A DNA stretch of 64,000 nt. Origin: Asterias rubens. Its lineage: Eukaryota. The notes beneath the pieces are model-generated. The model was not told where the DNA came from. It did no database searches and worked only from the letters and a program-made list of their open reading frames with translations. The stretch lies in assembly GCF_902459465.1 (NCBI RefSeq), contig NC_047083.1, positions 10,230,001 through 10,294,000 on the forward strand. The letters run 5' to 3'. The position numbers and the translations under genes were made by a program. This document shows positions 9,422 through 61,571 of this stretch, piece after piece. Positions within the stretch are counted from its first letter, which is position 1; every line of letters begins with the position of its first letter.

Positions 9422-12400
9422 ATGGAGACGAAAGTGTGCTTCAAAAAATGCAACTTCAAGTTGGCTATGTTCTTGCACGTGCTCATATCGAGTGTACTGT
9501 TCGCATGTTTTATGAAGTCGTATGCAGAAACAAGTCATGCTTACACTTCTGAAACTAATTCAAAACATGGAATGAAATCATCAGAAGATCTTGAAGGACT
9601 TAGACCTTCTTCGGACTGCTCTGAAGATGATGACAGTTGCTTCATACGCGACGAAGAACATGAACTTGCCGAAGAAGAAGAAGTGCATGGAATTGCTGGA
9701 GCTAAAACTGAACCTAAAGCCGGCTACACATGGGACAAAAATGGGTACATCATGTTTTGTCCATGTATGGGTGAGTAGAATAGAATAAAGTTGGTGGGTT
9801 TACTTTCCTCTTTTCTTTATGAAATTGAAAACCATTTACCGTTCAGAAGCTCACTTGAAAACAATAATTACTTATTTATTTTTTTATTAATTGTGATAAT
9901 AATAATAATAATATGAAGTGTTCAAACCACAATCAACAGTTAGTGGATCGTGGATGACTAAGTAAAAACAGATATGAGATAGTAGGTTCATAGGTCTTGT
10001 CATTAATAATAAAAGTGAGCCATTCATTAAGAAATTCTCTATTTTATGAAATCTTTCCAATATGTAACTTTTGTTTTTAACAGGTCGTTTTGGCAACCAA
10101 GCAGAGCATTATCTCGGAGCAATGGCATTTGCTAAAGCACTCAACAGAACGTTGGTCTTGCCTCCATTCCGGACATATGTAAGTCTTCATTTACTCACAC
10201 GTACACACCTATCCCTATAAATAGCGCCCTCAAGAATTGAGAGTCCAGAGCATTGACACTAAGGGACGAAAAAGACCAAGTTGTGATAATTTGACTCACC
10301 TGTGAGTGTAAAGATCAGAGGGTTTCATAATTAACTCCAACCATGCTCAGGCCTGCTACTTCACGGAGGCAACGGAGGCGATTGCCTCCGTGTCCTTTAC
10401 CAAGAAGAAAATGCCTTGGTGCCCTTGCCATTTCAAAAACGAAGCATACAGCCCTGCATGCTCAAACTTTATTTCAATGAAGTTTTATAGTCCTATAGTT
10501 TTTATCTTTAGTGTGTGCTTGGATGTGCTGTGATTTGTGTTCTTTTTAATATCTGATTTGTAACTCATTTTTGATTATTTTTTACTTGTACTTGCTTGTG
10601 TATTGGTTTTAAATTGCAAAATACTCCAGGCTGTTTTGACATGCGTGACATTAAAAGGTTTTATGAATTGCAGGGTCATTAGTTTTACACTATTTTCTTT
10701 GTAGGCTCATGCATCATTTGGGGAGTTGTTTCAAGTCAGACCAGCTCTTGAGTTCCATCGTGTGATCCTCATGGAGGATTTCATGAAGTTTCTTGCTCCT
10801 AAATACTGGCCGCCTGGTCAGAGAGTTGGCTACGCCCACCTACCAGTCAACGATGATGGTGTTGCATGCACCATGAAAAATGGTAAAGGATCATTTAAAT
10901 ACTCAAAAGTAACTTGACAATATGTGAGGACTTCTTCTCTCAAAATATCTGCATTTACGTGTGTATGACAGGCCTGGAATTTCATCTTTGAAAGGGCAAG
11001 GCCATTTGTATTTTGCAAGGGGCACTTACATTGGAAAACCTTAAAGTCTATGGGGAACTTTTGAAGGGGCACCAAGATGAAATTCCAGGCCTGTCATACA
11101 CCAGGGCAACATATAGACCATGGCCTCCGTGGCATCTTGTATTTCCAGGCCTGTAACTTTGTCTTCTTGTGTGGACAAAAGCTTCGCCTACAGGGAAACG
11201 AGTGGCAGTTTTTTGTATTCCTTTGAACTTGAGAAAGTTGAGAAGTGGTGTTTAATAAGGCACTGGACATAAAAGAAATATTAGCATAAAAATGTACTTG
11301 TTTGGATACACCAAGTTAGAATACTGCTGTCGATTTCACCAAACTCTTCTTAACTTGGGATTAATCTTAGGACTTAGGAAGAGTTCAGTTCTGTATCCAA
11401 AGACGCATTAAACCCATCCTAAGTTAGGAGGGGTTAGGCCTACTCGTCCTAACTTGAGATGGAATTAATCCTAGCGTTTCGTGATATCGGCTGCGGGTCT
11501 TTGATAAATTACCAAACATTTCCAGTGCCCTTAATAGACAATTTACTTTCACAACCTTTGTGTTGAGGGTTAGCCCTGAAAACATTTTTATCCTCTTTTT
11601 TTTCAGGCAGTCCATTTGGACCTTTCTGGAACCACTTCAACGTTACTTTTGATTTATGCATAAAATATCAACTGTTTAATGTTGCTGACATCAGTAATAA
11701 ACAATCACTGGAAACTACAAAAAGAATCTGGGATGAAAGGTAGGTGTTTAAAGAAGTATAGTTTTTGTTTGATGTTCTTTGGTTTTGTTGTTTTTGTTCA
11801 TCACTGTCCAGGCTTGTGTAGTTGGAGCTAGTATACCACTCATCTTGTATACCGCCCTCTGGTGACAACTTAGAATAATGACACTTATGTACTAAAGCAT
11901 TACTTGGACTCAGAAAATAACCCAATTATTTCTTAAACTAGTCAAGTTGTCATTGCCTCTTTCCTATGATTCTCAATTGAGATTTTTGTTTTATTTTTAT
12001 TTAGAAATATTTCTCAACTAGATTTCTGTATTTTCTGATCCTGTTTATTGATGCTTTGTGTATAATTTGTAATAAATACATCTGCAATTTGAGGCATAGC
12101 ATGGTGAGGTATCAATGTATATTTGGTTTGCGGTGACTAGACGATGACTAGAGCAAGCTAGTCGAAACGTTGAGACCAATTTCAGAAATGACTCCGCGGC
12201 AGTACAGTTAATTATGATCCTATAAGCTAAAGTAGTAGTCCAGTCTAATTTCTATACCATCCGCCCTGGTAATAGTTAAAAGCAGGACAGTTCTTTTCAG
12301 AACTGAGAAGTCTCCCGAACCTCCGATTATCTACTCCACGGCAGTAGAATAAAGCAAGACAGTTCCCTAAGAACAACTCTACCTGGCAAGTAGATACACA

Positions 12401-15400
12401 CATGGTGTTACCGCAAACCAAATATACATACATCTGCAATAAAATTTACCTAAATTTGTATTCTTCCAAACACACATCTTCCTTTTTCATTGTTTTCATT
12501 TTAATGTATGAAATAGCACGATGGTATTATATTGTTAGAGTGTATTTTCATTAATACTTTTGTTGTTCAGCACGTTTGAACGAAAATTACTTGGGAAAAC
12601 GGTTAATTTTTGTTTTTGCATTTCAGTTCATCTTGGATAGTTGTATTTATGGTGTATTGGTGTTTGCTTTCATGAAATTTTGTAAATGTTTATTATTTTG
12701 TGCTGTTATATATTTGTGTACATTTTGCATTGTTTTGGTCAAATAAATACTTCTAATCATTTTTATTTCTAAAATGTTCCCCTTTTTTGATTGCTTGTTT
12801 TTATGTTTTGTATTACTTTACGGGATTGTTTTTTGGGTAGTGATTTGGTTTGCTTTTGGGCAATCCCTAGGCTTCCATTTGTTCTTTGTATTTTAAAATG
12901 TCCATAATGTTTTCATAATATTTGTATACATTTCAAGTATTTTGTTGCTATGTGTTTTTGAGGTTTTCAAACCCTGAATGAATGAATGAATAAATTATTA
13001 TAATTATAATTATTATTCATTACCAGATTCCCACCGATGGAGCATCCTGTTATAGCTCTCCGTGGGTCACCAGGCTCCTACCCAATGCTTGGTGGAAACC
13101 GAGCTATCCAAAAATACTTCAAATGGGAACCTAAGTTTTTTCAAGAAGCTGGAACCTACATCAAGGAGACATTTCAAGATGAGGGGTTCGTTGGAATCCA
13201 TTTACGGAACGGAATAGATTGGGTAAGTAAGATTGATTTTCTAAAACTTGCTTCATTCATTCTCAAATTCCAATGCAGTATTTTGATGATGGTAGTTTTT
13301 AGGTTGGTATTTTTCATGACTTTTATGAAACAACATCTCACCTCAACATCATCTCGATCTAATTTTTAACAATTTTATACATTTTCTATTATAATTGTTC
13401 TCTTTTTCCTGTGCAAATATTTAGTTTTCTATTATAATTGTTCTCTTTTTCCTGTGCAAATATTTAGTTTGGTATTTGATTGTACATGTATGTTTTTGAG
13501 TGATCCAAGTTGTAACAATTTTGTACATTTTGATTTTAATAATAATTGTTTTCTTTTTCCTGTGCAATTATTTAGTTTGGTATTTGGTTGTATGTTTTTG
13601 TATGTTTTTGACGATGGCAATTTTTAATCAGCTTTTTGGGCTATCCTTGGTTGTATTTTTTCTGTTTGCTTGACTGTATTGCCGAAATAAGTAATAATAG
13701 TAAATAATAATATGTGCCTTACCATTGAACTACATTTGTACATTATTGATGCTATGTACTGAACAAATGTTGCTATTTTCTGTTTTGCAATATTTATAAT
13801 GTCGTGAACTATAAATCTGTGTACGATTGTAGAGAAATACATTTTATTTGTTGACCCTAATCCTTACCCCGACCCCTAACACTAGAGTTTCTCATAAATT
13901 CCATTTGTTATATAGCTTTCACTTCTGATTAATTGTGAAAATATCTTTATTATAGGTAAGGGCATGTCAACATGTCGATGACCACCCGTTAAAACGCTTC
14001 ATGGCTTCAACACAGTGTCTGGATGCAACGCCTGACGCCATAGTTACAAAGGTAACAATTTATAAAACTTCTGTGACAGATTTGTTTATAGTCACACAAA
14101 AATCACTTGATTCTTTTGCCCTGAATTTAGTTTGTCCAGAAAGGTATTTCCCTTGAGTTTAAAGGCAGTGGACACTATTGGTAATTACTCAAAATAATTA
14201 TCAACATAAAACCTTTCTTGAATACAAGTAATGGGAAAGGTTGATAGTATAAAACACTGTGAGAAACAGCTCCCTCTGATGTGACGTAGTTTTCGAGAAA
14301 GAAGTATTTTCGAGAAAGAAGTATTTTTTCACAAATTTGATTTTGAGACCTCAGATTTCGAATTTGAGGTCTCGAAATCAAGCATCTGAAAGCACACAAC
14401 TTCAAGTGACCATGGTGTGACAAGGGTGTTTTTTTTTTCTTTCATTATTATCTCGCAACTTTGATGACTGATTGAGCTCAAATTTTCACAGGTTTGTTAT
14501 TTTATGCATATGTTGAGATACACCAACTCTTAAGACTAGTCTTTGACAGTTACCAATAGTGTCCAGTGTCTTTAAATGATTTTGGGTTGAACAAAGACAA
14601 ATTGACTAGGTTGTATGGCTTCTGAATGGCCCCCAGTACAACGATACTTACATAGGTAGACTGCCAACAAAGGGACTCATATCTGTTGGAAAATGATGTC
14701 ATCCCAAAATCAAATTGACCTTGAACCCCCATAAAAATGTTTTATAATGTTTTGTAAACACCTTGTGGTTTCTGGAGTATTGACTTTACAACGTTTTGGA
14801 TTATTTTACAGGAATTATGTCTTCCCAGTCTCTCTCACATCCTTGAGCACACGGCAGCTGTATTCAAACATGTCAACGCTAGACATCTTTACATAGCAAC
14901 AGATAAACAACCATATATAGAGGAATTTACAAATCTTCTACAACCAGTTGGGGTAAGTTTTAGAAATCTGTCATACATATTCATTAAAACTCAGCATTGA
15001 TTCCTTAATAAATATTCATAACCTGACTTCATCCATTGATGTACATCCATTACCAATTCATGAATATTCACGGATGCTGTTTCTTAATTTAGATTCTGTT
15101 GACTGAAACCTAACTTTGTAAGGAAAACCTTATGAATAATAATGATTTGTGTAAATTTCATGTTTGAATTCTGTTCTTTTTTTTAGCACCCAATCATACA
15201 GAAACTGACCTTATAATTTGTTTTCTTCCTATTTGTTGAGTTTCTGTTCCTATCTGAAACCTAACTTTGTAAGAATAAACTTTTGAAATAATCATGATTG
15301 TATTTTTATGTTCAATGTTCAGTTTGAACCTCATGAATAATCATGATTTGTATAAATTCTTTTCTTTGTCTGGTACCTTATCATACAGACAGACCTTATA

Positions 15401-39200: not shown

Positions 39201-42200
39201 TCATATTTCGAGGCTTGCATTTCTTTTAAAATTTATCATCTTTGGTTTTATCATTTTTTTTTCTGCAGGCAAAGGAGTCATGGGAAATGAATCCAACTGA
39301 GAAATTGAGCTCAGCAGAGATTGCTAAGACAAAAGGAACAGAGAAGTTTAAGGTAAGAAAAATTTAGATAAGATGATCATTAAAGCCTGTTCATACTACC
39401 TGTGAATTCGAAGTGAATTAATTTGGTGTCACAGGGCCGTTTGTCGTTGCGATTGTTTCGCAGGAGATGAGCACAACTCAACTGTTGCGAATTATTCATT
39501 GCTAAAACAATTTGTATCGCATTCGCTGGATAAGGCTTTACTCATATTGATTTAAAGGCAGTGGACAGTTTTTGAATTTTTATATTGACTGTTTTATATT
39601 GAATATTGAATATTTTATTTTGACTGTTTTATATTGACTGTTTTATATTGAATATTTTATATTGCATGTTTTATATTGAATGCTTTATATTGACTGTTTT
39701 ATATTGACTGTTTTATATTGACTGTTTTATATTGACTGTTTTATATTGTATATTTTATATTGAATGTGTTATATTACATTTTTTATATTGAATGCTTTAT
39801 ATTGAATGCTTTATATTGACTGTTTTATATTGACTGATTTACATTGAATATTGAATATTTTAATTTGACTGTTTTATATTGAATATTTTATATTGCATGT
39901 TTTATATTGAATGCTTTATATTGACTGTTTTATATTGACTGTGTTATGTTGAATATTTAAGTTTGAATGCTTTGTTTTGAATGCTTTATTTTGAATGTTT
40001 TATAGTGAATGTTTTATATTGACTAATTTATACTGAATGTGTTAAATTGAATGGTTATTTTGATAGATTTTGGAACGATCTTGTTATAATGAAACTAAGC
40101 ATGTTTTGGCTTAATTTTAGGTCTCTGCTTACTCTGCTTTATACCCAAAGCATTTTGTTCATTTTGTGTTTGGTGGCCATTTTCCCTTTATTAGATTTGT
40201 GCTAATTTGTGCACTAGATTTGTAAAGTGAAAATGCTTAGGTGAAGTTCACAAAAAACATTTATTAACTTGTACCTTAATTTCTTTTCGCATAGGGTGGT
40301 GAATACAAGAAAGCAGTGAAGCAATACAAGAGAATCACGGACTACTTGGATCACGATTCCGAATTCTCAGAGGAAGAGAAAAAGACGTCAAACGAGCTTC
40401 TTTTGGCCGCACATCTTAATCTTGCAATGTCTTATATCAAGATGGAAGAGTTCACTCAAGCTGTTGAAGCATGTGATAAGGTTAGTACCGAGTATCATTC
40501 GCCCTCTTGGTGTGACCTCATGCACCTTGGGCCAGCCCCAAGTGACCCGTTCCACAAGCAGGGCACAAGCTGACCCGGGTGAGCCCCTGGAATGACGTCA
40601 AAGCTATTTGAACGTACCGGGGGCAGACCAGGGTCGACCCTGGGAAGCTAATCGAACGGACCCATAGTTATAGCAAGAAAAGTTCTCTTAAGAACATAAT
40701 CTACCCAGCAAATAGCTGACACATGGTGTTACGTCACCTTGTTATGCCTAAAATCCTATATGAAATTATATGAAATGAAATCACAATTGACTTATTTCTA
40801 AATACTTCTTTGTCATAGGCGCTTGAGATCGATGACAAAAACATCAAAGGTCTGTTCCGACGAGGGCAGGCTAACCTTTCCATGGCTGACCCTGTCTTAG
40901 CAAAGAATGACTTCAGTCAAGTTGTAGCTCTGGATCCAAACAACAAAGCCGCTAAGAACCAACTCGTTATCTGTCAACATAAGATTAAACAAGCCAATGA
41001 CAAGGAGAAGAAACTCTATGGAAAGATGTTTGAGAAGTTTGCCGAGCGAGACAGAAAGGTAAGGACCAGAAATCTATCACGATTTGATAATGTTTTTTGG
41101 GTTTGAACAAAGAACTGACTAGAGTGGGATTCGAACCAACGGTCTCCGGATTATTGTGCCGGCGCTCTACCAACTGAGCTATCTAGCCGTATTTTTGCGG
41201 AGTCCCTATTTTGTCAATATCTTTGTTCGGGGGTGCCAGTCCGAAGCCATGCAACCGTTAACTGCTGTGTAGCCAGGGATCACACCCAAATTACGATACA
41301 ACCTGGGAAGCGGCAGCCAGGGGATCACCTTAAGGGGATGCGACTTTTTGTTTCAGATATTAATATAAACCACAAGGGAAACTGACTGGGCAAATTTTGA
41401 AATGATTTTTGGGGTTGAACGAAGAATTGACTAGAGTGGGATTCGAACCAACGACCTCCGGATTAACGTGCCGGCGCTCTACCAACTGAGGTATCTAGCC
41501 CTATTTTGTCAGTTTCTTTTTTTAGGGGTGCCAGTTTTGATAATGTGACAAAAGCTCTGTTTCACACTGTATTTCTTAGACCCATAGGATACAGGATACA
41601 GCCCTGTGGAAGCCCCAGTGTTTCTTTACCCCCCCAGTTTCCTTGGCACACTTCCACACTGTCCCCACTTAGGTCCCCAGTCTACAGGATTCCGGTCGCA
41701 CCTTTCCAGAATAACCCAGGTTTTTATCCATTACCCCTACTCCAGAGCAGGGGTTGCTATTCCCCAGGTAATTGCTAGAGAAGATCAGGGGTAAAGCGTT
41801 CATAGTGTGAAAGGGGCTGGTTGTTATTCCCTGGGGTTACCCTTTGTTTCAATGTTTCAAAATTTCAAATTGTTCATCTTAAAGACAGTGGACACTATTG
41901 GTAATTGTCAAAGACCAGTCTTCCCACATAGTGTATCTCAACATATGCCTAAAATAAAAATCTGTGAAAGTTTGAGCTCAATTGGTCGTCGAAATTGCAA
42001 AATAATAATGAAAGAAAAACTCACCCTTGTCACACGAAGTTGTGTGCTTTCAGATGCTTGATTTCGAGACCTCAAATTCTAAACTTGAGGTCTCAAAATC
42101 AAATTCGTGGAAAATTACTTCTTTCTCGAAAACTACGTACAGAGGGAGCCGTTTCTCACAATGTTTTACACTATCAACCTCTCCCCATTACTCGTCACCA

Positions 42201-42592
42201 AGAAAGGTTATATGCTAATATTTGTTTTGAGTAATTACCAATAGTGCCCATGGCCTTTAATGTTCCTCATGTCGTTTTATTGCATTTCTTCAACAACACC
42301 TCAAGTTCTTTCTGGTATCAGGAAAACTTATATTTAGTTAGAACTTCATTATTTTCTTGTTTACAGTCTGCAAGAAAAACTGACGTTGTTTATTTGTTTG
42401 TTTTTCATTTTAGATTGAAGAAGCGACTAAACCTAGCACTGAGCTACCCACAGACTACGGTGGCGTATTTAATAAAGAAGATGTGGATGCTCCTTCCAAT
42501 GGTGGAGATGCACAAAGTAATGAACCATCAAATAGCAGTCAGGAAACAAGTGAGACACCGAATACTGTTGGGGCAATGGAAGCGGAGGTATA
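36289..42592 (+). CDS. FKBP4: Large immunophilin FKBP52/51 (two FKBP domains + TPR)
   Basis: Exons 36289-36532, 36991-37089, 37227-37389, 38329-38398, 38862-39040, 39269-39352, 40295-40480, 40819-41058, 42415-42592. Motifs DITPNKDGGVLK, VSVHYVGTLLNGEEFDSSR, VIKAWDLGVATMKRGE, KIPADATLVFEVELF, AKESWEM, HLNLAMSYIK, KGLFRRGQA; ends MEAEV*. Confidence 0.95.
36585..36690 (+). mobile_element. tRNA-derived SINE head
   Basis: A-box TAGCTCAGTTG, B-box GGTTCGAATCC, tail ...CAACCCCAAATCATT shared with the 41095-41500, 53400-53495 and 57590-57740 copies. Confidence 0.75.
37824..38012. mobile_element. Small MITE (AGACC..GGTCT, AT duplication; ISL2EU-like) nested in a TTAA MITE
   Basis: Interrupts the host consensus CTCAAT|TGGTCG; ends read CAATAGACC...GGTCTATTG. 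End coordinates are approximate. Confidence 0.65.
38488..38800 (+). mobile_element. tRNA-derived SINE with CORE(MIR)-like central domain
   Basis: GTGGCCGAGCGG A-box, GGTTTGAATCCC B-box, then GTGCCCTTGAGCAAGACACTTAAC...CCACCCCCGGTGTAACTGGGTACC, resembling the CORE motif. Confidence 0.65.
39560..40060. repeat. Degenerate 13-14-bp AT-rich tandem repeat (GTTTTATATTGACT) in FKBP4 intron 6
   Basis: TTTTATATTGA recurs throughout the interval. Confidence 0.85.
41095..41530 (-). mobile_element. Tandem tRNA-like SINE units (312-bp period)
   Basis: 72-nt cloverleaf-like heads at 41117-41188 and 41429-41500, separated by a body also seen at 47455-47570 and 57690-57740. Confidence 0.8.
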
Positions 42593-45394
42593 GGGATGAT
42601 AACCCAACTGCTGTTTCATGTCCTCGTTTCAAGCACTGACTTGTAAAATACAGCTTAGAATTCAATTCTCTCATTGAAAATGCCTGAAATTTAATAATTG
42701 TATTAATTTTATTCCCGATAGCGACTATCATGAAATGATCAAAGATTCTTTATCTCAGGTGTGGAAATTTGGGTTGAAATGAAACATTTTTAATGGTTGA
42801 TGATGTATAAAATAAATGCAGTTTATTTCACGAGACAACCTCAGCATGTTTGGTTGACTGTAGGATTGGAATTGTTATAGACAGTTTAACCTTTGACATG
42901 TCATGGTTGCGACACAGGGCCTGTACTTCCTGCAGGCACAAAGTGTACACAGGTCCGTGAAAGAAAACTAAACCCAACTCTTCAGTAGAACCTCTAAATC
43001 CATTCAGCTGGTTATTTTGACAGCATAAAATGTAAAAACTTCCTGATGTTAATGGTTACAATGTAGAATTTTGCTTACTAGGAAATGTGCAACTACAAAT
43101 GGGCCCAAGTTTAGCAAGAACCTGCACACCAAGAGTCGTTATTTAAGGCACTGGACACTATTGGTAATTGTGTCCTCTCCCTTGGTGTATCTCAATATAA
43201 AAAACCAAACCTGTGGAAAATTTGAACTCAATTGGTTGTTGACTTTGCGAGAGAATAATGTTAGAAAAAACACCCTTGTCACACGGAGTTGTGTGCTTTC
43301 AGATGAATGAATTCAAGTCTTCAGCTGAGGCCTCAAATTCAATTCAATATTTAGTGAGAAAACTGCCTGACTTCAGAGGGAACCTTTTCTCACAATGTTA
43401 TGAACAGCTCTCCATTACTTGTTACCAAGTTAGTTTTTTTATGCGTACAATTATTTTGATAAATAACCAGTGGTGTCCAGTGCCTTGAAATCTATTTAAA
43501 CAGAAAATTAAAATGTAAAATAATGTTCTAAGTAAAATGAACTATTTGGAATGTCTTGTATGGATCGTCAAAAGTAGTAGATAGCTCGTAAATTTTCCCT
43601 GTGAAACTGAAAATTAATTGGATGTTATAATTGAAAATACTGAACTTTAGACGTGGAATATTATAAAATGAATCAACGTTCATTGAAATAAATGTTTGAA
43701 TATTTGAAAGCTTAGTGCATAGTTTCTGCTTAAAACTGGTAGAACTTCCAGGTATTTTTTTTTATATTTTAAGAGCAAACCATCGACGATGCATCCGATG
43801 TCATTGATGATGTCATTTATAAATGACAATTTGTTTGCATGTAATGCCGGGTTGAAGATGGATGGAGAAAAAAAACTTACTATTTTCTGTTTTTACATAT
43901 TTTTTATAAGTTTGCTAAAAATAATCACACTTCTTTATTTTAATGCAATTAACAAAATGACCATCGGACAAACTGACTTCTCAAAACAAGTCATGGTTGA
44001 GGACTGTGAGTCTTCAACTTTTTTCCTCAGTTCATGATTTGACACTTTTTATCTTTCTTAATCTTCCAGTTTCTTAAAATAGATAGGGAGACATCACAGT
44101 GAAGAAAGACTTTTCCCTTGTTTTGATCAAACTTCAAGATTTCTTTTTGAGATGCTTTGTAGAGAGCTTGTCAAGCTCCAGATGTAATTTTCAATCTTGA
44201 GTTGTTTTACTCTCCTAAAAGCATTGCTGCTGTCCTGGAGAGGGTGGGTTGCAAAATCCATTTATGCTGTGTGCTCGTGCTGTCCATGAATTGAATTGCC
44301 CTTTTGTTGACCAAATTTCAAGATTTATATTTGTTGTAATCTAGGAAGCCTGTAAACATCTAGATGTAAATGAATTAAAAGTTGAAGCCCTGTTTATGAC
44401 CAAGCTTCAAGATGTTTATTTGTGGCATGTAGAGAGTCGTTTAATGTCTAGAACACAAGATATTAACTCCATATGAAGAAAAAAAAACTACATATTTTTC
44501 AGGATTTTTCATTTTTGTATAAACAGCAGGGCCCAATTTCATTGCTCCGCTTTTTACCTCTAAATTCTGTACTTCCTTTTACCTGTCTCCACTTACTGTG
44601 CAACCACCAAATTTCTGCGCTAGCTGTGTATAAATTAAAAGAATGCATAGTACGAGGAGAACGCACGCGCATAAGCAAAAATGTCCTTCTAACCCGTGAA
44701 ATACATGCGAGTACATAATTCCCTGCTTCCTAAGGCTTAAGCGCCGATTCTTTGCTTATGGAAAGCCATAAAAATGGGCTCTGATCAAAAGTCGAAATTA
44801 TTGAAAGTTTAACATGAAGCATTTATAATATAAATTGTTTTAGCTTAATGTTTTGCTTTCTCGCAATGCTCTATTTGTTTTTGGTACATCTCATGTGAAT
44901 ATAGTCTCCTGTGCATGCTTGCAGGTTTATCAGTATGAATGATAAGGATATTAAAAATATGAATTCATTATACATTGAGTAATGTGTGTAGTTGAAACTT
45001 TCATGAAATGTCTGTGGCTATGAAGTTATTATTGATACAGCACCTATACAGTAGTAAACCATACTCCCGATGGGTGCGTTTGTTTAGCTTCCCTGGGTCG
45101 ACCCGGGTGTGCCCCCGCTGCGTTCGAATAGCTTTGACGTCATTCCAGGGGCTCACTCAGGTCACTTGGGGGTGACCCGATGAGCATGACGTTACCACGA
45201 GAGGGCGAGTGTGATCGTTCGATTAGCTCTTGTCAGGGGCTCACCTGAGTGAGCACCGCGAGGTCGACCCAGGGAAGCTAATCGAACGCAACCGATGAAC
45301 TACCTCGTAATGTAAACCAACAAACTTGTACAACAGTTTTATAGCTCTTGCAGTACGCACTGCTAAAACATTGAATTCAATCTACCTCTAGCCA

Positions 45395-45510
45395 CTGGGC
45401 AATCTCGGTAGTCTAGTTGGTAAGACACTGCTCTAGAATTCCAAAGGTTGAGGGTTCAAACCCCACCCGAGTAATATGCATGTGATTTTTTTTCACAGAA
45501 CTCTGGAAAG
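45395..45510 (+). mobile_element. tRNA-derived SINE (second family)
   Basis: A-box TAGTCTAGTTGG, B-box GGTTCAAACCC. Confidence 0.7.
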
Positions 45511-46203
45511 AACTTATAGTGTAAAGTGCTAACACATATCTATCCCGATGCAAGTTTAACATCTCCTGAGTTTATGACACAAAATCTAAAACTTCTCACA
45601 TGAAGAGTGAAGTATCTTGCCTGCCATGAAATGCACGAATCACGTATTTTGTAAGCAAACGTTACATGGTCCCGTCTGTTTAGAATCATTGTCTTAGGAC
45701 AACAAAATGGAGACATCCAAAATTTTACATCAACTTTTGAAAATTTATTAGTAATATACCGATACGTAATTGGTACAGTTTAAATATGTTGTACATTAAT
45801 TATAAAAGTGTAATGAGTTTGTACACAACACAATATTTTTTTTAAATAATGGCTACACAATTACACTAATAATTTATAACAAAATACATTAATATTGTTG
45901 GCCATCACCATTTATGATCTACACATAAATAGTTGAATTAAGTTTCACATAGAAAGAATACATTTTCTACATATTTTAATATACTATCCCCTTTCCATAC
46001 CATCCTGAGCTTTTGATCTTTTTGACTGGATCTTAGTACATGTACTCGAAATGTAATCCATTTTACCTGGAATCCACATATAAGTCAATTACTCGGTGTC
46101 ATTAAAAATAACTATATGACTTTAACCGGTATATATATATACTTTAAAAGGGTGGTATTATGTTGATATTAATATTATTAAGATATTCATATTATTAACA
46201 TCT

Positions 46204-46247
46204 GTCTCCTGACGATGACTAGAGCAAGCTAGTCGAAACGTTGAGAC
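46204..46247 (+). ncRNA. Minimal type I hammerhead ribozyme
   Basis: Stem I GUCUC(46204-08)/GAGAC(46243-47); core CUGACGA(46209-15); extra U; stem II GACUAG/CUAGUC with 6-nt loop; GAAA; palindromic ACGU stem III; cleavage triplet GUU (cut after 46242). Confidence 0.8.
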
Positions 46248-46832
46248 CAATTTCAGAACTGACTCCGCGGCAGTTCAGTTAATTACGATCCTATAAGCTA
46301 AAGTAGTAGTCCAGTCTAATTTCTATACCATCCGCCCTGGTAATAGTTAATAAACAGGACAGTTCTTTTCAGAACAAAATTTTTCGCGGCAAAATGTTAA
46401 CCAAATGAAAATATTACGCACCTATCCTTTACTTCTCCTTCCCCCTAAAAAAAACCCACCAAAAACAAAAATGCACCTAAATATATCAATATTAATACTA
46501 TTCATCACAAATAAATAAACAATAGGAGTAAACGACAGATAAACACAAATGATCCAAGTTAAGTTCCATGACTTTGTTCTACTTTGGGCCAAGGTTGGGG
46601 GCTAACATAAAGTAATAATTGACGTAGTGATACACCATAGATTAAGATTAATAAGTCCTCATTTACAACATTCTAATCCAAATTTTACAAATAGAATTCA
46701 CCTTTTTTTTTATTGCAGACTTTTCGTAATACTTCAGCTACTACTTCAGTAACTGTTTCAGTTGAACTTGCTTTTGGTGGATTGCTGGCCATTGAGTGAA
46801 AACGCATCCCTAATAAAATAACCTTGTTGAAT

Positions 46833-47147
46833 AACACTCGTTTCAGACAGGCGTGCCGGAGTCACGCCGAACCAAATAGATTAGAAGCGACTCTAGGTCA
46901 ACCAAAATAAATTTTGGTTTAAGACAGGCGAACTTAACATAACATTTACTTTGGCTTGGCTCATATGACAAGATCGACGTCTGAAACCAAGGCGCTTCAG
47001 AGTCATTCCGAACGACTGCAACTGTCGATCTTTCGACTTCTAGCACGTCCAGTCACTCTTAACTATTTCAGACGTCAAACTTTTCATGTGCTCAATTCAG
47101 AATTTGGTTTGGCGTGACTGTAGAGCGCCTGTCTGAAACGGGTGCTA
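46833..47147. mobile_element. About 315-bp MITE with about 44-bp imperfect TIR, about 25 nt past the TMEM41B stop
   Basis: CACTCGTTTCAGACAGGCG...AGTCACGCCGAACCAAAT and the reverse-complement arm at 47100-47147; TA flanks. Confidence 0.8.
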
Positions 47148-47170
47148 TAGACATAATCAGAGGTTAATTA

Positions 47171-50100
47171 TTACTCAAATTTCTTACCCAATCTATTTTT
47201 CAATATAACGGGTAGTATAGACACAATAGCTAGTACGGCTAAAACAATAACTGAAGTCCATGATACAGTGTCTCCATAGTGACTCAAGTCATATAAAGTA
47301 GTTCCGGCTTGAATTGCTACAAATGACGGGGGAGCTACTCCTAGAAAAAACACAAGAGAAGATCATTATTCAGCCAGGATGTACTAACAATGTATGTTTT
47401 ATAAGTGACCTTATAATCTCTTAGAGCTTCATCCTCATTTAAGAAGAGCAACCCTACTCTTGGTTCGGGATGCAAGTCAGAAGCCATACAACTGCTAGGT
47501 AGCCGGGGATCGCACCCAAGTTACGATACAACCTTGGAAGCGGTAGCCAGGGACTTTTTATTTCAGATATCATTTTTATAAAAGATACATTAATGTTTGA
47601 ACTAACAAAAACACTTGACATACCTAAGAATGTCCCAATGAAGAATGGTGTAATGGGAACTTTGAGGACTGGTGAGGTAATATTGATGAACCAATTAGGC
47701 AGAAACGGCGTGATTCGTAGAAAAATAATATAGTTCAGCAGATGCTCTTGCTGTTTGGCGACCTGGAAAACAAAAAGGAAATAATACTGTATATTAGAAC
47801 TTTGTTATAACTTGATCCATCGTACACTGCACTCAACAAAGTAGCCTTTTGAGGAAAGATTTACAGAATCCCTAATATCAATTAAGAATTGAAACAACTT
47901 TTTCAGAGCATCAAAGATCTGTTCATGTTGCTGCCACAGATCTTTGTCTTATGGTATTATGTATGCTTCAATAATCAACACAATTAAATTTTACATAGAT
48001 AGTATGTTTTTCGTCAAGGAGGTACATTTACTCAATGGAAAAACTCAAGTCAGCCGGACTTTTCCGGTTAATACGAGTTATCTGGCCCCATTGCTTAAAA
48101 CTTAAACATTGCCCTTCCTTGATCTCTAACAAATAATGTCAAAATGAGAAACAAAAATTAAAAATGAAGATCTTTATCTTTCCTGTACGGCCATCTGCTT
48201 TTTTTTGCTGCATAAATTATTGCAAAGTTTTTATTTCATTTCATTTCTAACAATTCACAAAGTACAAATGGAAACAGTTACTCAAAAGATTTCTATCTGA
48301 CGTTGTTTTTGGATAAATAAAACACAATAGTGAACAAACAAGTGTTTTGGTAGGTACTGCTTGTTATTGAAAACATTAATCACTATGAAATAAGCCACGT
48401 AACTCACCGTTTTAGACCAACTCTCTACTTTCTCTGGTATATACTTCATAACAAGGCGTACACCGACGAGGTAGGATATTAAATAACAATTAGACGCTCC
48501 AATGGCTGAACACTGCAGATTAAAAAGAACAAAAACAAACCATTTTGTTATTTCCATTTTAGTGACTCAGGAAATTTTCTTCTAGAAAAACTTCCTTGCT
48601 TAGAGAGGTACAGCAGCTTTCGATAGTACATTTTGTGAATCATTTCACTTTGAAGTATCATGTGGTTATGGACAAAAAATAGTTGCTACCCATCAAAATT
48701 TTAAATAATAAGCTTTTAATGATGCCATTTATTTAGTGGTACTTACCAAACAAACCAGGAGTAATGCAAGAGGGAATGGGAACAAGAACCCAGACAGAAT
48801 GCTGAGAAAGATGGAGCCTGGAATTGCAAATGTCTGTAAACTAAAAACAGCTAAGGAATACAAGATAGAATCATTTTTTTAGTGTTCTTAATTGCTATCT
48901 CTTCATTAATTCAGCCATGATATTTGGTCCCTGGAAAAAAGGGACAATTTTATTGAGTAAATCTATATGGTGGAGGCTTAACAGCTTAATAGACTTTTTC
49001 AAGCTATTTCATCAGGCAAGTAGGGTACCCTTCAAAAAACAAATCAACAAACAAACAAACTAATTGATTCAAAATGCTTTGAACTCAAGATACAAAAGGA
49101 TACAATATATAAGTTATGAAGAATGCCACTAAGACAGTGACGTAGTACGTTTTACTATAGCGAGATAAGACTCTTCCTAGTGCTTTGGCATCTTCAATAT
49201 CTCTTGGCAGTTTGATGTACTGGACCTCATCTCTGCAGAGAAAAAAACAAACATTTAGATGGTTAGCAATCTTCAATGAACAAGCTAGCGAATACGTGCA
49301 AGGTGCGATCATTGAATGAAAGGTCTTGAACTTCACTCTTGAAAGAACCCAGCAATTTTCCTCTGGTAAGGGGAACATCTAGAAGAAAAATGTAAGCAGG
49401 CCTGTTATACATAACGGAGACAACGAAGGCGATTGCCTCCATGCCCCCTGGTTATTGCCTTGGTGCCCTTGAAAAAATACCATTAGAAATTTGCAATTTC
49501 CTCATATGGTGCGCTTTACCAAGAAGAAAAAGCCTTGGTGCCCTTGCCCTTTAAAAAACGAAGTTTGCGGGCCTGTGTAAGTTTGAAGTGGAACCTTGCA
49601 AAGGGCACAACAGCGACATTTGCAACATTACAACAGTTCAATAGATTTGTTACATATTCCAATTCCAAATATTATTTTATGCTGTCGATTTTTTTTAGTT
49701 ATTAACTAATACTTACGGATCCAGTTGTGGGAAACTGTAGTAAACAAACGTCATAAAACCTAATGCTGAGAAGAATATCAGAGCAAGAATAATGAAAGAT
49801 CTGGTCGTTTTACCCGGCTGGTCATCAGGTGGTGACTCATCTGCAGATTCAAAAAAGAAAAATTAACAAACGTTATTAAATTTGAAAGAAAGATGTAAAA
49901 TTCAACCCCCCCCCCCCCCCCCCCCCCCAGCACAATTTATCATAACTGCATGATTGCTCTTGCGTCTTATTTATTAATTAATCAACACTAAGTCTAATTA
50001 ATATGATTAATCATAAATAACTTAAATTAAAAAGAGAGTACAGACAGTGGACCATGGCGGAGTATGTATAGTTGCGATAACGTAACCCTCCTCCCGACGG

Positions 50101-51158: not shown

Positions 51159-61571
<10,413 letters not shown>

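What the first reader, a model, noticed from the sequence alone, without database searches (positions are those of the whole stretch)
46204..46247. Intact minimal hammerhead ribozyme downstream of TMEM41B
All core nucleotides are present: stem I (5 bp), CUGACGA, a 6-bp stem II, GAAA, and GUU at the cleavage site. The extra nucleotide between A9 and G10.1 has precedent in natural hammerheads. The ACGU palindrome replacing stem III is typical of Penelope/retrozyme hammerheads, which work as dimers. This copy is a singleton on the strand opposite TMEM41B, about 1 kb past its stop and about 3.6 kb past the FKBP4 stop. It could cut FKBP4 read-through or antisense RNA if two transcripts pair.
Basis: partly seen in the sequence, partly recalled or inferred. 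Interest (0 to 1): 0.8.

Follow-up and report, generated by a model that had tools for sequence, protein, structure and literature searches.

The report
Penelope-type hammerhead heading a common repeat
The hammerhead-ribozyme motif is real, but it is not a lone host-gene device: it is the first 44 bases of a very abundant jumping-gene fragment of a known kind (Penelope-type), and a single copy like this one is not expected to cut RNA.

Summary
The motif at 46204-46247 (+) is exactly as described. It has a 5-bp helix I, CUGACGA, one extra U, a 6-bp helix II, GAAA, the ACGU palindrome and U17, with the predicted cut at 46242/46243. A descriptor scan finds it once in the window, against about 0.003 expected by chance.

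It is not a singleton. Positions 46211-46375 recur at 12140-12303 with 97% identity, where the ribozyme's 5' part is lost. In a DNA run, word depth jumps from 6.5 to 65,000-73,000 exactly over 46204-46375. Other copies start at the first base of helix I and mostly continue past 46375 into a roughly 150-nt tail that this copy lacks.

All four published hallmarks of Penelope-like-element minimal hammerheads are met (PMC4209133), including the "extra" nucleotide. The related copies show Penelope-style insertion anatomy.

RNA reads cover the family heavily, but 90-95% of them come from other copies, the libraries are unstranded, and no molecule ends pile up at the cut site. No second hammerhead lies nearby, so no dimer can form in cis.

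The idea that it processes FKBP4 or TMEM41B transcripts has no support. It is a new member of a known kind and of low interest. Earlier notes of this scan already report this hammerhead repeat family on other parts of the same genome.

The parts
46204..46247 (+). Minimal type-I hammerhead motif of the Penelope-like-element kind. Helix I is 46204-08/46243-47, core CUGACGA 46209-15, unpaired U 46216, helix II 46217-22/46229-34, GAAA 46235-38, C15.2-G16.2-U16.1 46239-41 and U17 46242. The predicted scissile bond is 46242/46243.
   Evidence: sequence, pattern and descriptor scan. The hallmarks are those listed in PMC4209133.
46204..46375 (+). This locus's copy of the repeat, 172 nt. It has a complete 5' head but lacks the roughly 125-150-nt 3' tail that the family carries.
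   Evidence: DNA word depth is 65,000-73,000 here against 6.5 in the flanks. Loose ends of other copies sit at 46203-46209 on the 5' side. At 46375 the reads run on into the family tail sequence.
46362..46375 (+). Hairpin GTTCT-TTTC-AGAAC at which this copy ends. It shares CUUUUCAG with the histone mRNA 3' stem-loop. In full copies the stem is 7 bp.
12140..12303 (+). Second copy of the same stretch in the window, 97% identical. The 5' strand of helix I and the CU of CUGA are replaced, so this hammerhead is disabled.
12076..12440 (+). The whole retro-insertion around the second copy. A 13-nt target duplication (12076-88 and 12428-40) flanks it. An inverted piece of the element's 3' tail lies at 12089-12137. 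The direct copy runs to 12429.
   Evidence: 12115-12137 is the reverse complement of 12407-12429; 12072-88 matches 12424-40.
40669..40754 (+). 5'-truncated tail piece of a related family, about 80% identical to 12350-12411.

Best explanation
The motif is the 5' head of one 3'-shortened, monomeric copy of a very abundant short interspersed retroelement, about 300-340 nt when complete. The element has no coding capacity. Its ribozyme and its insertion anatomy are those of Penelope-like elements (PLEs). It is therefore most likely a non-autonomous, pLTR/tail-derived element copied by a PLE reverse transcriptase/GIY-YIG endonuclease.

Shown:
- the motif itself;
- its repeat nature and the family boundaries;
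- the PLE-type hallmarks of the ribozyme;
- target-site duplications, an inverted 5' tail piece and two alternative 3' ends in related copies;
- family-level transcription.

Inferred:
- mobilisation by a PLE enzyme (no such ORF was seen here);
- that this lone copy is catalytically idle. It has no helix III, needs a second hammerhead to build one from the ACGU palindrome, and none lies nearby. It landed by chance between FKBP4 and TMEM41B and has no role in their RNA processing.
For: (1) Repeat nature. 46211-46375 matches 12140-12303 at 97%. DNA word depth is 65,000-73,000 on 46186-46401 against 6.5 in the flanks. The 5' boundary of other copies falls at 46203-46209, mostly 46204, with A/T-rich upstream flanks that do not agree with each other.

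(2) Independent copies. L001 and L002 belong to a second subfamily with a 21-nt indel and many substitutions, and both also begin exactly at GTCTCC. L002 has a 9-nt target duplication, CACTGCGGG.

(3) Ribozyme class. [quoted passage not shown] It says that most such motifs occur as single, widespread, probably truncated copies. All of these hallmarks are present here.

(4) PLE insertion anatomy in relatives. The 12k copy has an inverted partial tail at its 5' side plus a target duplication. The direct copy ends at ...ATATACAT, while L002 and the inverted piece run 26-37 nt further. Both ends lie in an A/C-rich loop closed by CATGGTG/CACCATG. This matches the optional 30-40-bp tail and the start of reverse transcription inside an AC-rich stem-loop reported for a PLE (PMC11167929).

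(5) Expected inactivity.
- Single minimal hammerheads gave no detectable cleavage in vitro, and dimers only low cleavage (PMC4209133).
- The anole PLE hammerhead needed the element's protein, and no RNA-seq ends were seen at its cut site (PMC11167929).
- Here the inactive hairpin (-16.1 kcal/mol) beats the hammerhead-compatible fold (-12.1).
- No other hammerhead lies in the window.
- No pile-up of ends and no back-joints appear in three RNA runs.
Against: - No PLE ORF (RT plus GIY-YIG) was found next to any copy examined, so the link to PLE enzymes rests on ribozyme type and insertion anatomy.
- This copy is truncated at the 3' end, which target-primed reverse transcription does not normally produce, and I see no target duplication around it.
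- Why copies start exactly at the first base of helix I is unexplained.
- The RNA libraries were unstranded, and ordinary RNA-seq is a weak detector of partial cleavage.
- The identical hammerhead in L001 and L002 was imposed by my exact-match search, so it does not prove conservation.
- Rfam models do not recognise the motif.
Confidence: 0.85

Rival explanations
1. The element is a retrozyme proper. The family would be a non-LTR retrozyme whose tandem copies are transcribed, self-cleaved by dimeric hammerheads and circularised. This copy would be a solo monomer left by that cycle.
For: The unit size of about 300-340 nt and the low G+C fit metazoan retrozymes (PMC7229834). A 2026 preprint argues that animal retrozymes derive from PLE pLTRs and that dispersed monomers are common. 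Family RNA is abundant.
Against: - No tandem arrangement at this locus, at the 12k copy, or in L001 and L002.
- Copies have target duplications and begin upstream of the cut site, so uncleaved RNA was the template.
- No back-joints and no end pile-ups appear in the RNA reads.
- The ribozyme is the minimal PLE type without a closed helix I or loop-loop contacts, not the canonical type I of retrozymes (PMC7229834).
Confidence: 0.08
2. The ribozyme has been taken over by the host. On + strand read-through from FKBP4, or on RNA antisense to the TMEM41B 3' region, it would cleave in trans-dimer form and shape those transcripts.
For: The motif's core is intact. There is low RNA coverage in the unique flanks, 0-25 reads.
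Against: - The copy is one of thousands with the same head.
- No partner hammerhead lies nearby.
- An intermolecular helix III of 4 bp (ACGU, about -1.7 kcal/mol) is very weak.
- No read ends occur at 46242/3.
- The strand of the flank transcription is unknown.
- The copy carries private changes relative to the family majority (46275, 46351, 46354) and has lost its tail, as expected of a decaying insertion.
Confidence: 0.03
3. It is a chance match, or a plain inverted repeat that only looks like a hammerhead.
For: The minimum-free-energy fold of the 44-mer is a simple extended hairpin. Rfam gives no hammerhead hit.
Against: Descriptor hits expected by chance are about 0.003 per window, and 0 with the strict features. 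The same motif heads a large repeat family. It shows every class-specific hallmark of PLE hammerheads.
Confidence: 0.01

Closest known systems
Minimal hammerhead ribozymes of Penelope-like elements (Cervera & de la Pena 2014, PMC4209133)
   Same: The core is CUGANGA...GAAA...H. Helix I is short and open (5 bp) and helix II is long (6 bp). There is an unpaired nucleotide between A9 and G10.1, a G10.1-C11.1 pair, and a palindromic A15.1-C-G-U16.1 with no loop 3. Such motifs occur massively in a genome, mostly as single dispersed copies.
   Different: No PLE ORF was found beside any copy examined. Here the motif sits at the very 5' end of a short unit rather than inside a recognised pLTR of a full element.
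Poseidon PLE of Anolis carolinensis (Frangieh et al. 2024, PMC11167929)
   Same: The hammerhead lies upstream of an A/C-rich stem-loop where copies end at two alternative sites about 30 nt apart (the optional 'tail'). Targets are AT-rich. There are no RNA-seq ends at the ribozyme cut site.
   Different: The distance from hammerhead to 3' end is about 300 nt here, against about 90 nt there. The element here is non-coding. The biochemistry was not tested here.
Metazoan non-LTR retrozymes (Cervera & de la Pena 2020, PMC7229834; Li et al. 2026 preprint)
   Same: A short, roughly 300-nt, AT-rich, non-coding unit with a type-I hammerhead that is transcribed. Monomeric dispersed derivatives are known.
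   Different: There is no tandem arrangement and no circular-RNA junctions. The hammerhead is the minimal kind, not the canonical kind.

Membership tests
PLE minimal hammerhead (min-HHR) | Conserved core CUGANGA, GAAA, and H at position 17 | tested here: met
   CTGACGA at 46209-15, GAAA at 46235-38 and T at 46242.
PLE minimal hammerhead (min-HHR) | Short open helix I (4-5 bp) and long helix II (6-8 bp) with a G10.1-C11.1 pair | tested here: met
   Helix I is 5 bp. Helix II is 6 bp and starts with G46217-C46234.
PLE minimal hammerhead (min-HHR) | [quoted passage not shown] | tested here: met
   T46216. The feature is named in PMC4209133.
PLE minimal hammerhead (min-HHR) | Palindromic 15.2-16.2 with helix III absent or minimal | tested here: met
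   ACGT at 46238-41 is self-complementary and has no loop.
PLE minimal hammerhead (min-HHR) | Self-cleavage, as a dimer or with the element's protein | not testable with these tools
   There is only indirect negative evidence: no read-end pile-up at 46242/3 in three RNA runs.
Penelope-like element (autonomous) | ORF with a telomerase-like RT and a GIY-YIG endonuclease | tested here: not met
   No long ORF adjoins the copies. Pfam finds nothing of this kind in the ORFs of the window, L001 or L002. I therefore file it as PLE-derived and non-autonomous, not as a PLE.
PLE-type insertion | Two alternative 3' ends about 30-40 bp apart in an AC-rich stem-loop (the optional tail) | tested here: met
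   This holds in relatives. The 12k direct copy ends at 12429, while L002 and the inverted piece at 12089-12114 run 26-37 nt further. The stem is CATGGTG/CACCATG. The 46k copy itself lacks this end.
PLE-type insertion | Target-site duplication, frequent inverted or tandem partial copy at the 5' side, and an AT-rich target | tested here: met
   The 12k copy has a 13-nt duplication plus an inverted tail. L002 has a 9-nt duplication. Flanks are A/T-rich. No duplication was found around the 46k copy.
Non-LTR retrozyme | Head-to-tail tandem repeats of the unit | tested here: not met
   The window holds a single hammerhead. The 12k, L001 and L002 copies are single units.
Non-LTR retrozyme | Circular RNA from self-cleaved monomers | tested here: inconclusive
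   No back-joints appear among about 1,700-1,900 RNA reads per run, but these are ordinary libraries without enrichment for circles.
Rfam hammerhead families | Match to a curated covariance model | tested here: not met
   No hit at the gathering score or at E<=10 on 45900-46600. My inference, not tested, is that a motif without helix III and with the extra nucleotide fits those models poorly.

The most novel reading that the evidence does not exclude
The family may be a distinct PLE-dependent, SINE-like element in which the hammerhead defines the exact 5' end of the unit, and a histone-mRNA-like stem-loop gives an alternative RNA 3' end. The 46k copy stops exactly at that stem-loop. It could then be a retro-copy of such a processed RNA rather than a later deletion. 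No paper in the searched library links Penelope elements with histone stem-loops.
Probability: 0.1. Interest if true: 0.55.

Novelty: new member of a known kind. Interest (0 to 1): 0.15.

Why it matters
Mostly as a correction. An intact-looking ribozyme beside two host genes turns out to be one of thousands of retroelement heads, so it should not be read as a gene-regulatory device.

For people who study Penelope-like elements and retrozymes, the family is a clean example from a marine invertebrate. An earlier scan note, which I did not check, says the genome is a sea star's. The element is a short non-coding unit with a minimal hammerhead at its exact 5' end and PLE-type ends, and it is transcribed at a high level. 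It could serve for a census of how such units are copied.

Tried and rejected
- Rfam at the gathering score, and at E<=10 around the site, gave no hammerhead. The only hit was a meaningless snoRNA match at E=5.
- The repeat finder on 40-52 kb missed the second copy because that copy lies at 12 kb. BLAST of the region against the whole window found it.
- The search of earlier findings by sequence was blank. The operators warn that a blank there means nothing.
- I looked for a PLE ORF near the copies in the window, L001 and L002 and found none.
- I looked for a target duplication around 46204-46375 and for remains of the tail after 46375. BLAST at word size 7 found none. A weak alignment is not significant.
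- The strand of transcription at the locus could not be told, because all three raw RNA runs give equal counts in both mate directions.
- A literature search for Penelope plus histone stem-loop returned nothing.
- I considered the chance-hairpin reading and rejected it on statistics and family evidence.

Full report
**1. Observation**

The sequence at 46204-46247 on the + strand reads GTCTC / CTGACGA / T / GACTAG-AGCAAG-CTAGTC / GAAA / CGT / T / GAGAC. H17 is U, so the predicted cut lies between 46242 and 46243.

I wrote a minimal-hammerhead descriptor. It requires helix I and helix II of at least 4 bp each and GAAA, and allows 0-1 extra base and 2-8 nt in place of helix III. It finds this one site in the window on both strands. 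In 300 first-order Markov resamplings of the window it averages 0.003 hits, and none with the palindrome plus helices as long as here. A simpler pattern is expected 0.05 times. Chance is not a serious explanation.

Rfam does not recognise the motif, either at gathering scores or at E<=10 on 45900-46600. My inference is that a motif without helix III and with an extra core-adjacent base fits those models poorly.

**2. Gene context**

- FKBP_C and TPR exons lie on the + strand, and the last acidic ORF ends near 42590.
- VTT-domain (TMEM41 family) exons lie on the - strand, with the last ORF at 47174-47362.
- The motif therefore lies about 3.6 kb past the FKBP gene's end and about 0.9 kb past the TMEM41-type gene's end, on the opposite strand to the latter.

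**3. It is not a singleton**

BLAST of the region against the whole window shows that 46211-46375 equals 12140-12303 at 97% over 165 nt. In that second copy the 5' strand of helix I and the CU of CUGA are replaced, so its hammerhead is disabled.

Laying reads on 45700-47300 gave the following.
- **Depth.** In DNA contigs of run X25, word depth is 6.5 in the unique flanks and 65,000-73,000 across 46186-46401. The tool warns that this is not a copy number. A roughly 10,000-fold step still means a very abundant repeat.
- **5' boundary.** Other copies diverge from the window at 46203-46209, mostly at 46204, which is the first base of helix I. Their upstream letters are A/T-rich and do not agree with each other (agreement about 0.4). 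These are different insertion sites.
- **3' boundary.** At 46375 nearly all family reads run on into a common sequence (agreement 0.86-0.94 in RNA). That sequence is the one that follows in the 12k copy.

The window's copy is therefore 172 nt, complete at its 5' head and lacking the family's 3' tail.

An exact search of public metagenome contigs for the 39-nt core found two more copies, L001 and L002. Both belong to a second subfamily with a 21-nt indel and many substitutions. Both begin exactly at GTCTCC after unrelated flanks. L002 is bounded by a 9-nt target duplication, which gives a full unit of about 340 nt. The identical hammerhead in these two was imposed by my exact-match search, so it is not evidence of conservation.

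**4. What kind of element**

Cervera and de la Pena (PMC4209133) defined the minimal hammerheads of Penelope-like elements (PLEs). The hallmarks are:
- helix I of 4-5 bp;
- an unusually long helix II;
- the G10.1-C11.1 pair;
- palindromic 15.2-16.2.

They reported thousands per genome, mostly as single dispersed motifs that are "probably related to truncated PLEs", and sometimes as pairs on opposite strands. The motif here meets every structural hallmark. The extra U is a class signature, not an oddity.

The related copies also show PLE-style insertion anatomy.
- The 12k insertion has a 13-nt target duplication (12076-88 and 12428-40) and an inverted piece of the element's own 3' tail at its 5' side (12089-12137).
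- Copies end at two alternative points 26-37 nt apart: ...ATATACAT in the 12k direct copy, and further on in L002 and in the inverted piece.
- Both end points lie inside an A/C-rich loop closed by CATGGTG/CACCATG.

Frangieh et al. (PMC11167929) showed for an anole PLE that reverse transcription starts internally in an AC-rich stem-loop at two adjacent sites. [quoted passage not shown] They also found that targets are AT-rich.

I found no RT/GIY-YIG ORF beside any copy. I therefore call the family PLE-derived and non-autonomous, not a PLE. A 2026 preprint argues that animal retrozymes and their dispersed monomers are exactly such PLE-pLTR derivatives.

**5. Does this copy work?**

A minimal hammerhead has no helix III. 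It must borrow one by pairing its ACGU with that of a second hammerhead.
- **No partner.** No second hammerhead exists in the window.
- **Weak trans pairing.** An intermolecular ACGU/ACGU helix is worth only about -1.7 kcal/mol.
- **Competing fold.** The isolated 44-mer folds best into an extended hairpin (-16.1 kcal/mol) in which G5-A6-C7-G8 pair with C15.2-G16.2-U16.1-U17. The hammerhead-compatible fold is worth -12.1 kcal/mol.
- **Published activity.** Single minimal hammerheads did not cleave detectably, and dimers cleaved poorly (PMC4209133). The anole PLE hammerhead needed the element's protein and left no read ends at its cut site in RNA-seq (PMC11167929). Eight of nine Xenopus retrozyme dimers did not cleave.

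In three raw RNA runs:
- The family is heavily represented, at 200-430 reads per mate direction against 0-13 in the flanks.
- 89-95% of the laid reads run on into sequence unlike this locus, so they come from other copies.
- The two mate directions are equal, so the libraries are unstranded and the transcribed strand at this locus cannot be told.
- The tool lists no place where molecules begin or end, and depth is continuous across 46242/3. The first bin, corrected for partial coverage, gives about 330 against 284 in the next.
- No back-joints of a circular RNA are listed.

Ordinary RNA-seq cannot exclude a small cleaved fraction. Still, nothing supports cleavage, and nothing ties it to FKBP4 or TMEM41B transcripts.

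**6. Open points**

(a) I cannot explain why copies start exactly at helix I. In Drosophila virilis the 3' end of the PLE intron maps to the 5' end of helix I (PMC4209133). The RNA reads that enter 46204 have a weak consensus ending ...CCTCTTCA followed by G, which resembles a splice acceptor. This is only a lead.

(b) The 46k copy is truncated at the 3' end, exactly after the hairpin GTTCT-TTTC-AGAAC (46362-75). That hairpin shares CUUUUCAG with the histone mRNA 3' stem-loop. One single-copy DNA contig of X25 lies on both flanks but holds 331 nt between them, where the window has 184 (table 8). That individual seems to carry about 147 nt more, roughly the size of the missing tail. A later deletion or a haplotype difference is therefore the simplest reading. 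I could not check it further.

(c) Earlier notes of this scan on other parts of the same genome report hammerhead repeats fused to histone-type stem-loops and PLE tails. They are unchecked AI notes. The one on my own window (s1-151460, the 12k insertion) I verified.

**7. Verdict**

The motif is real. It is wrong as to singleton status and unsupported as to host function. The finding is a new member of a known kind, the minimal hammerhead at the head of a PLE-type non-autonomous retroelement copy. It is of low interest in itself.

Noticed in passing
window 46200-46385 vs run X25 contig (table 8): A single-copy DNA contig lies on both flanks but holds 331 nt between them, where the window has 184 nt. 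Another individual seems to carry about 147 nt more here, roughly the size of the element's missing tail.
   Followed up: no
window 46362-46375; also 12290-12305 and L001/L002: The element's hairpin GTTCT-TTTC-AGAAC (7-bp stem in full copies) shares CUUUUCAG with the histone mRNA 3' stem-loop and is followed by a purine-rich GAGAAG in full copies. The 46k copy ends exactly at this hairpin. No paper in the searched library links Penelope elements with histone stem-loops.
   Followed up: partly
window 46834-47157: This is a different repeat, with DNA word depth about 1,600-2,100 against 6.5. It has 47-nt inverted arms at 46831-46877 and 47102-47148, which is MITE-like. It lies between the hammerhead element and the last TMEM41-type exon.
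   Followed up: no
window 40496-40754 and 45070-45293: The repeat at 40496-40665 recurs inverted at 45070-45211 (88% over 95 nt). At 40669-40754 it abuts a tail piece related to the hammerhead family's 3' end. It may be another short element that shares that tail.
   Followed up: partly
window 41116-41188 (-), 41428-41500 (-), 45402-45474 (+): Two tRNA genes (54 and 46 bits) sit in a 312-nt direct repeat just after the FKBP gene's TPR exon. A weak tRNA-like hit (32.6 bits) lies 0.7 kb upstream of the hammerhead.
   Followed up: no
window ~54000-55370: A tandem array with an 85-nt period appears as a ladder of identical 84-aa ORFs in the ORF listing.
   Followed up: no
L001 1500-1640: The flank upstream of the L001 copy is full of GAGACC/GGTCTC words, which is the sequence of the hammerhead's helix I 3' strand. 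I cannot say whether this is coincidence.
   Followed up: no
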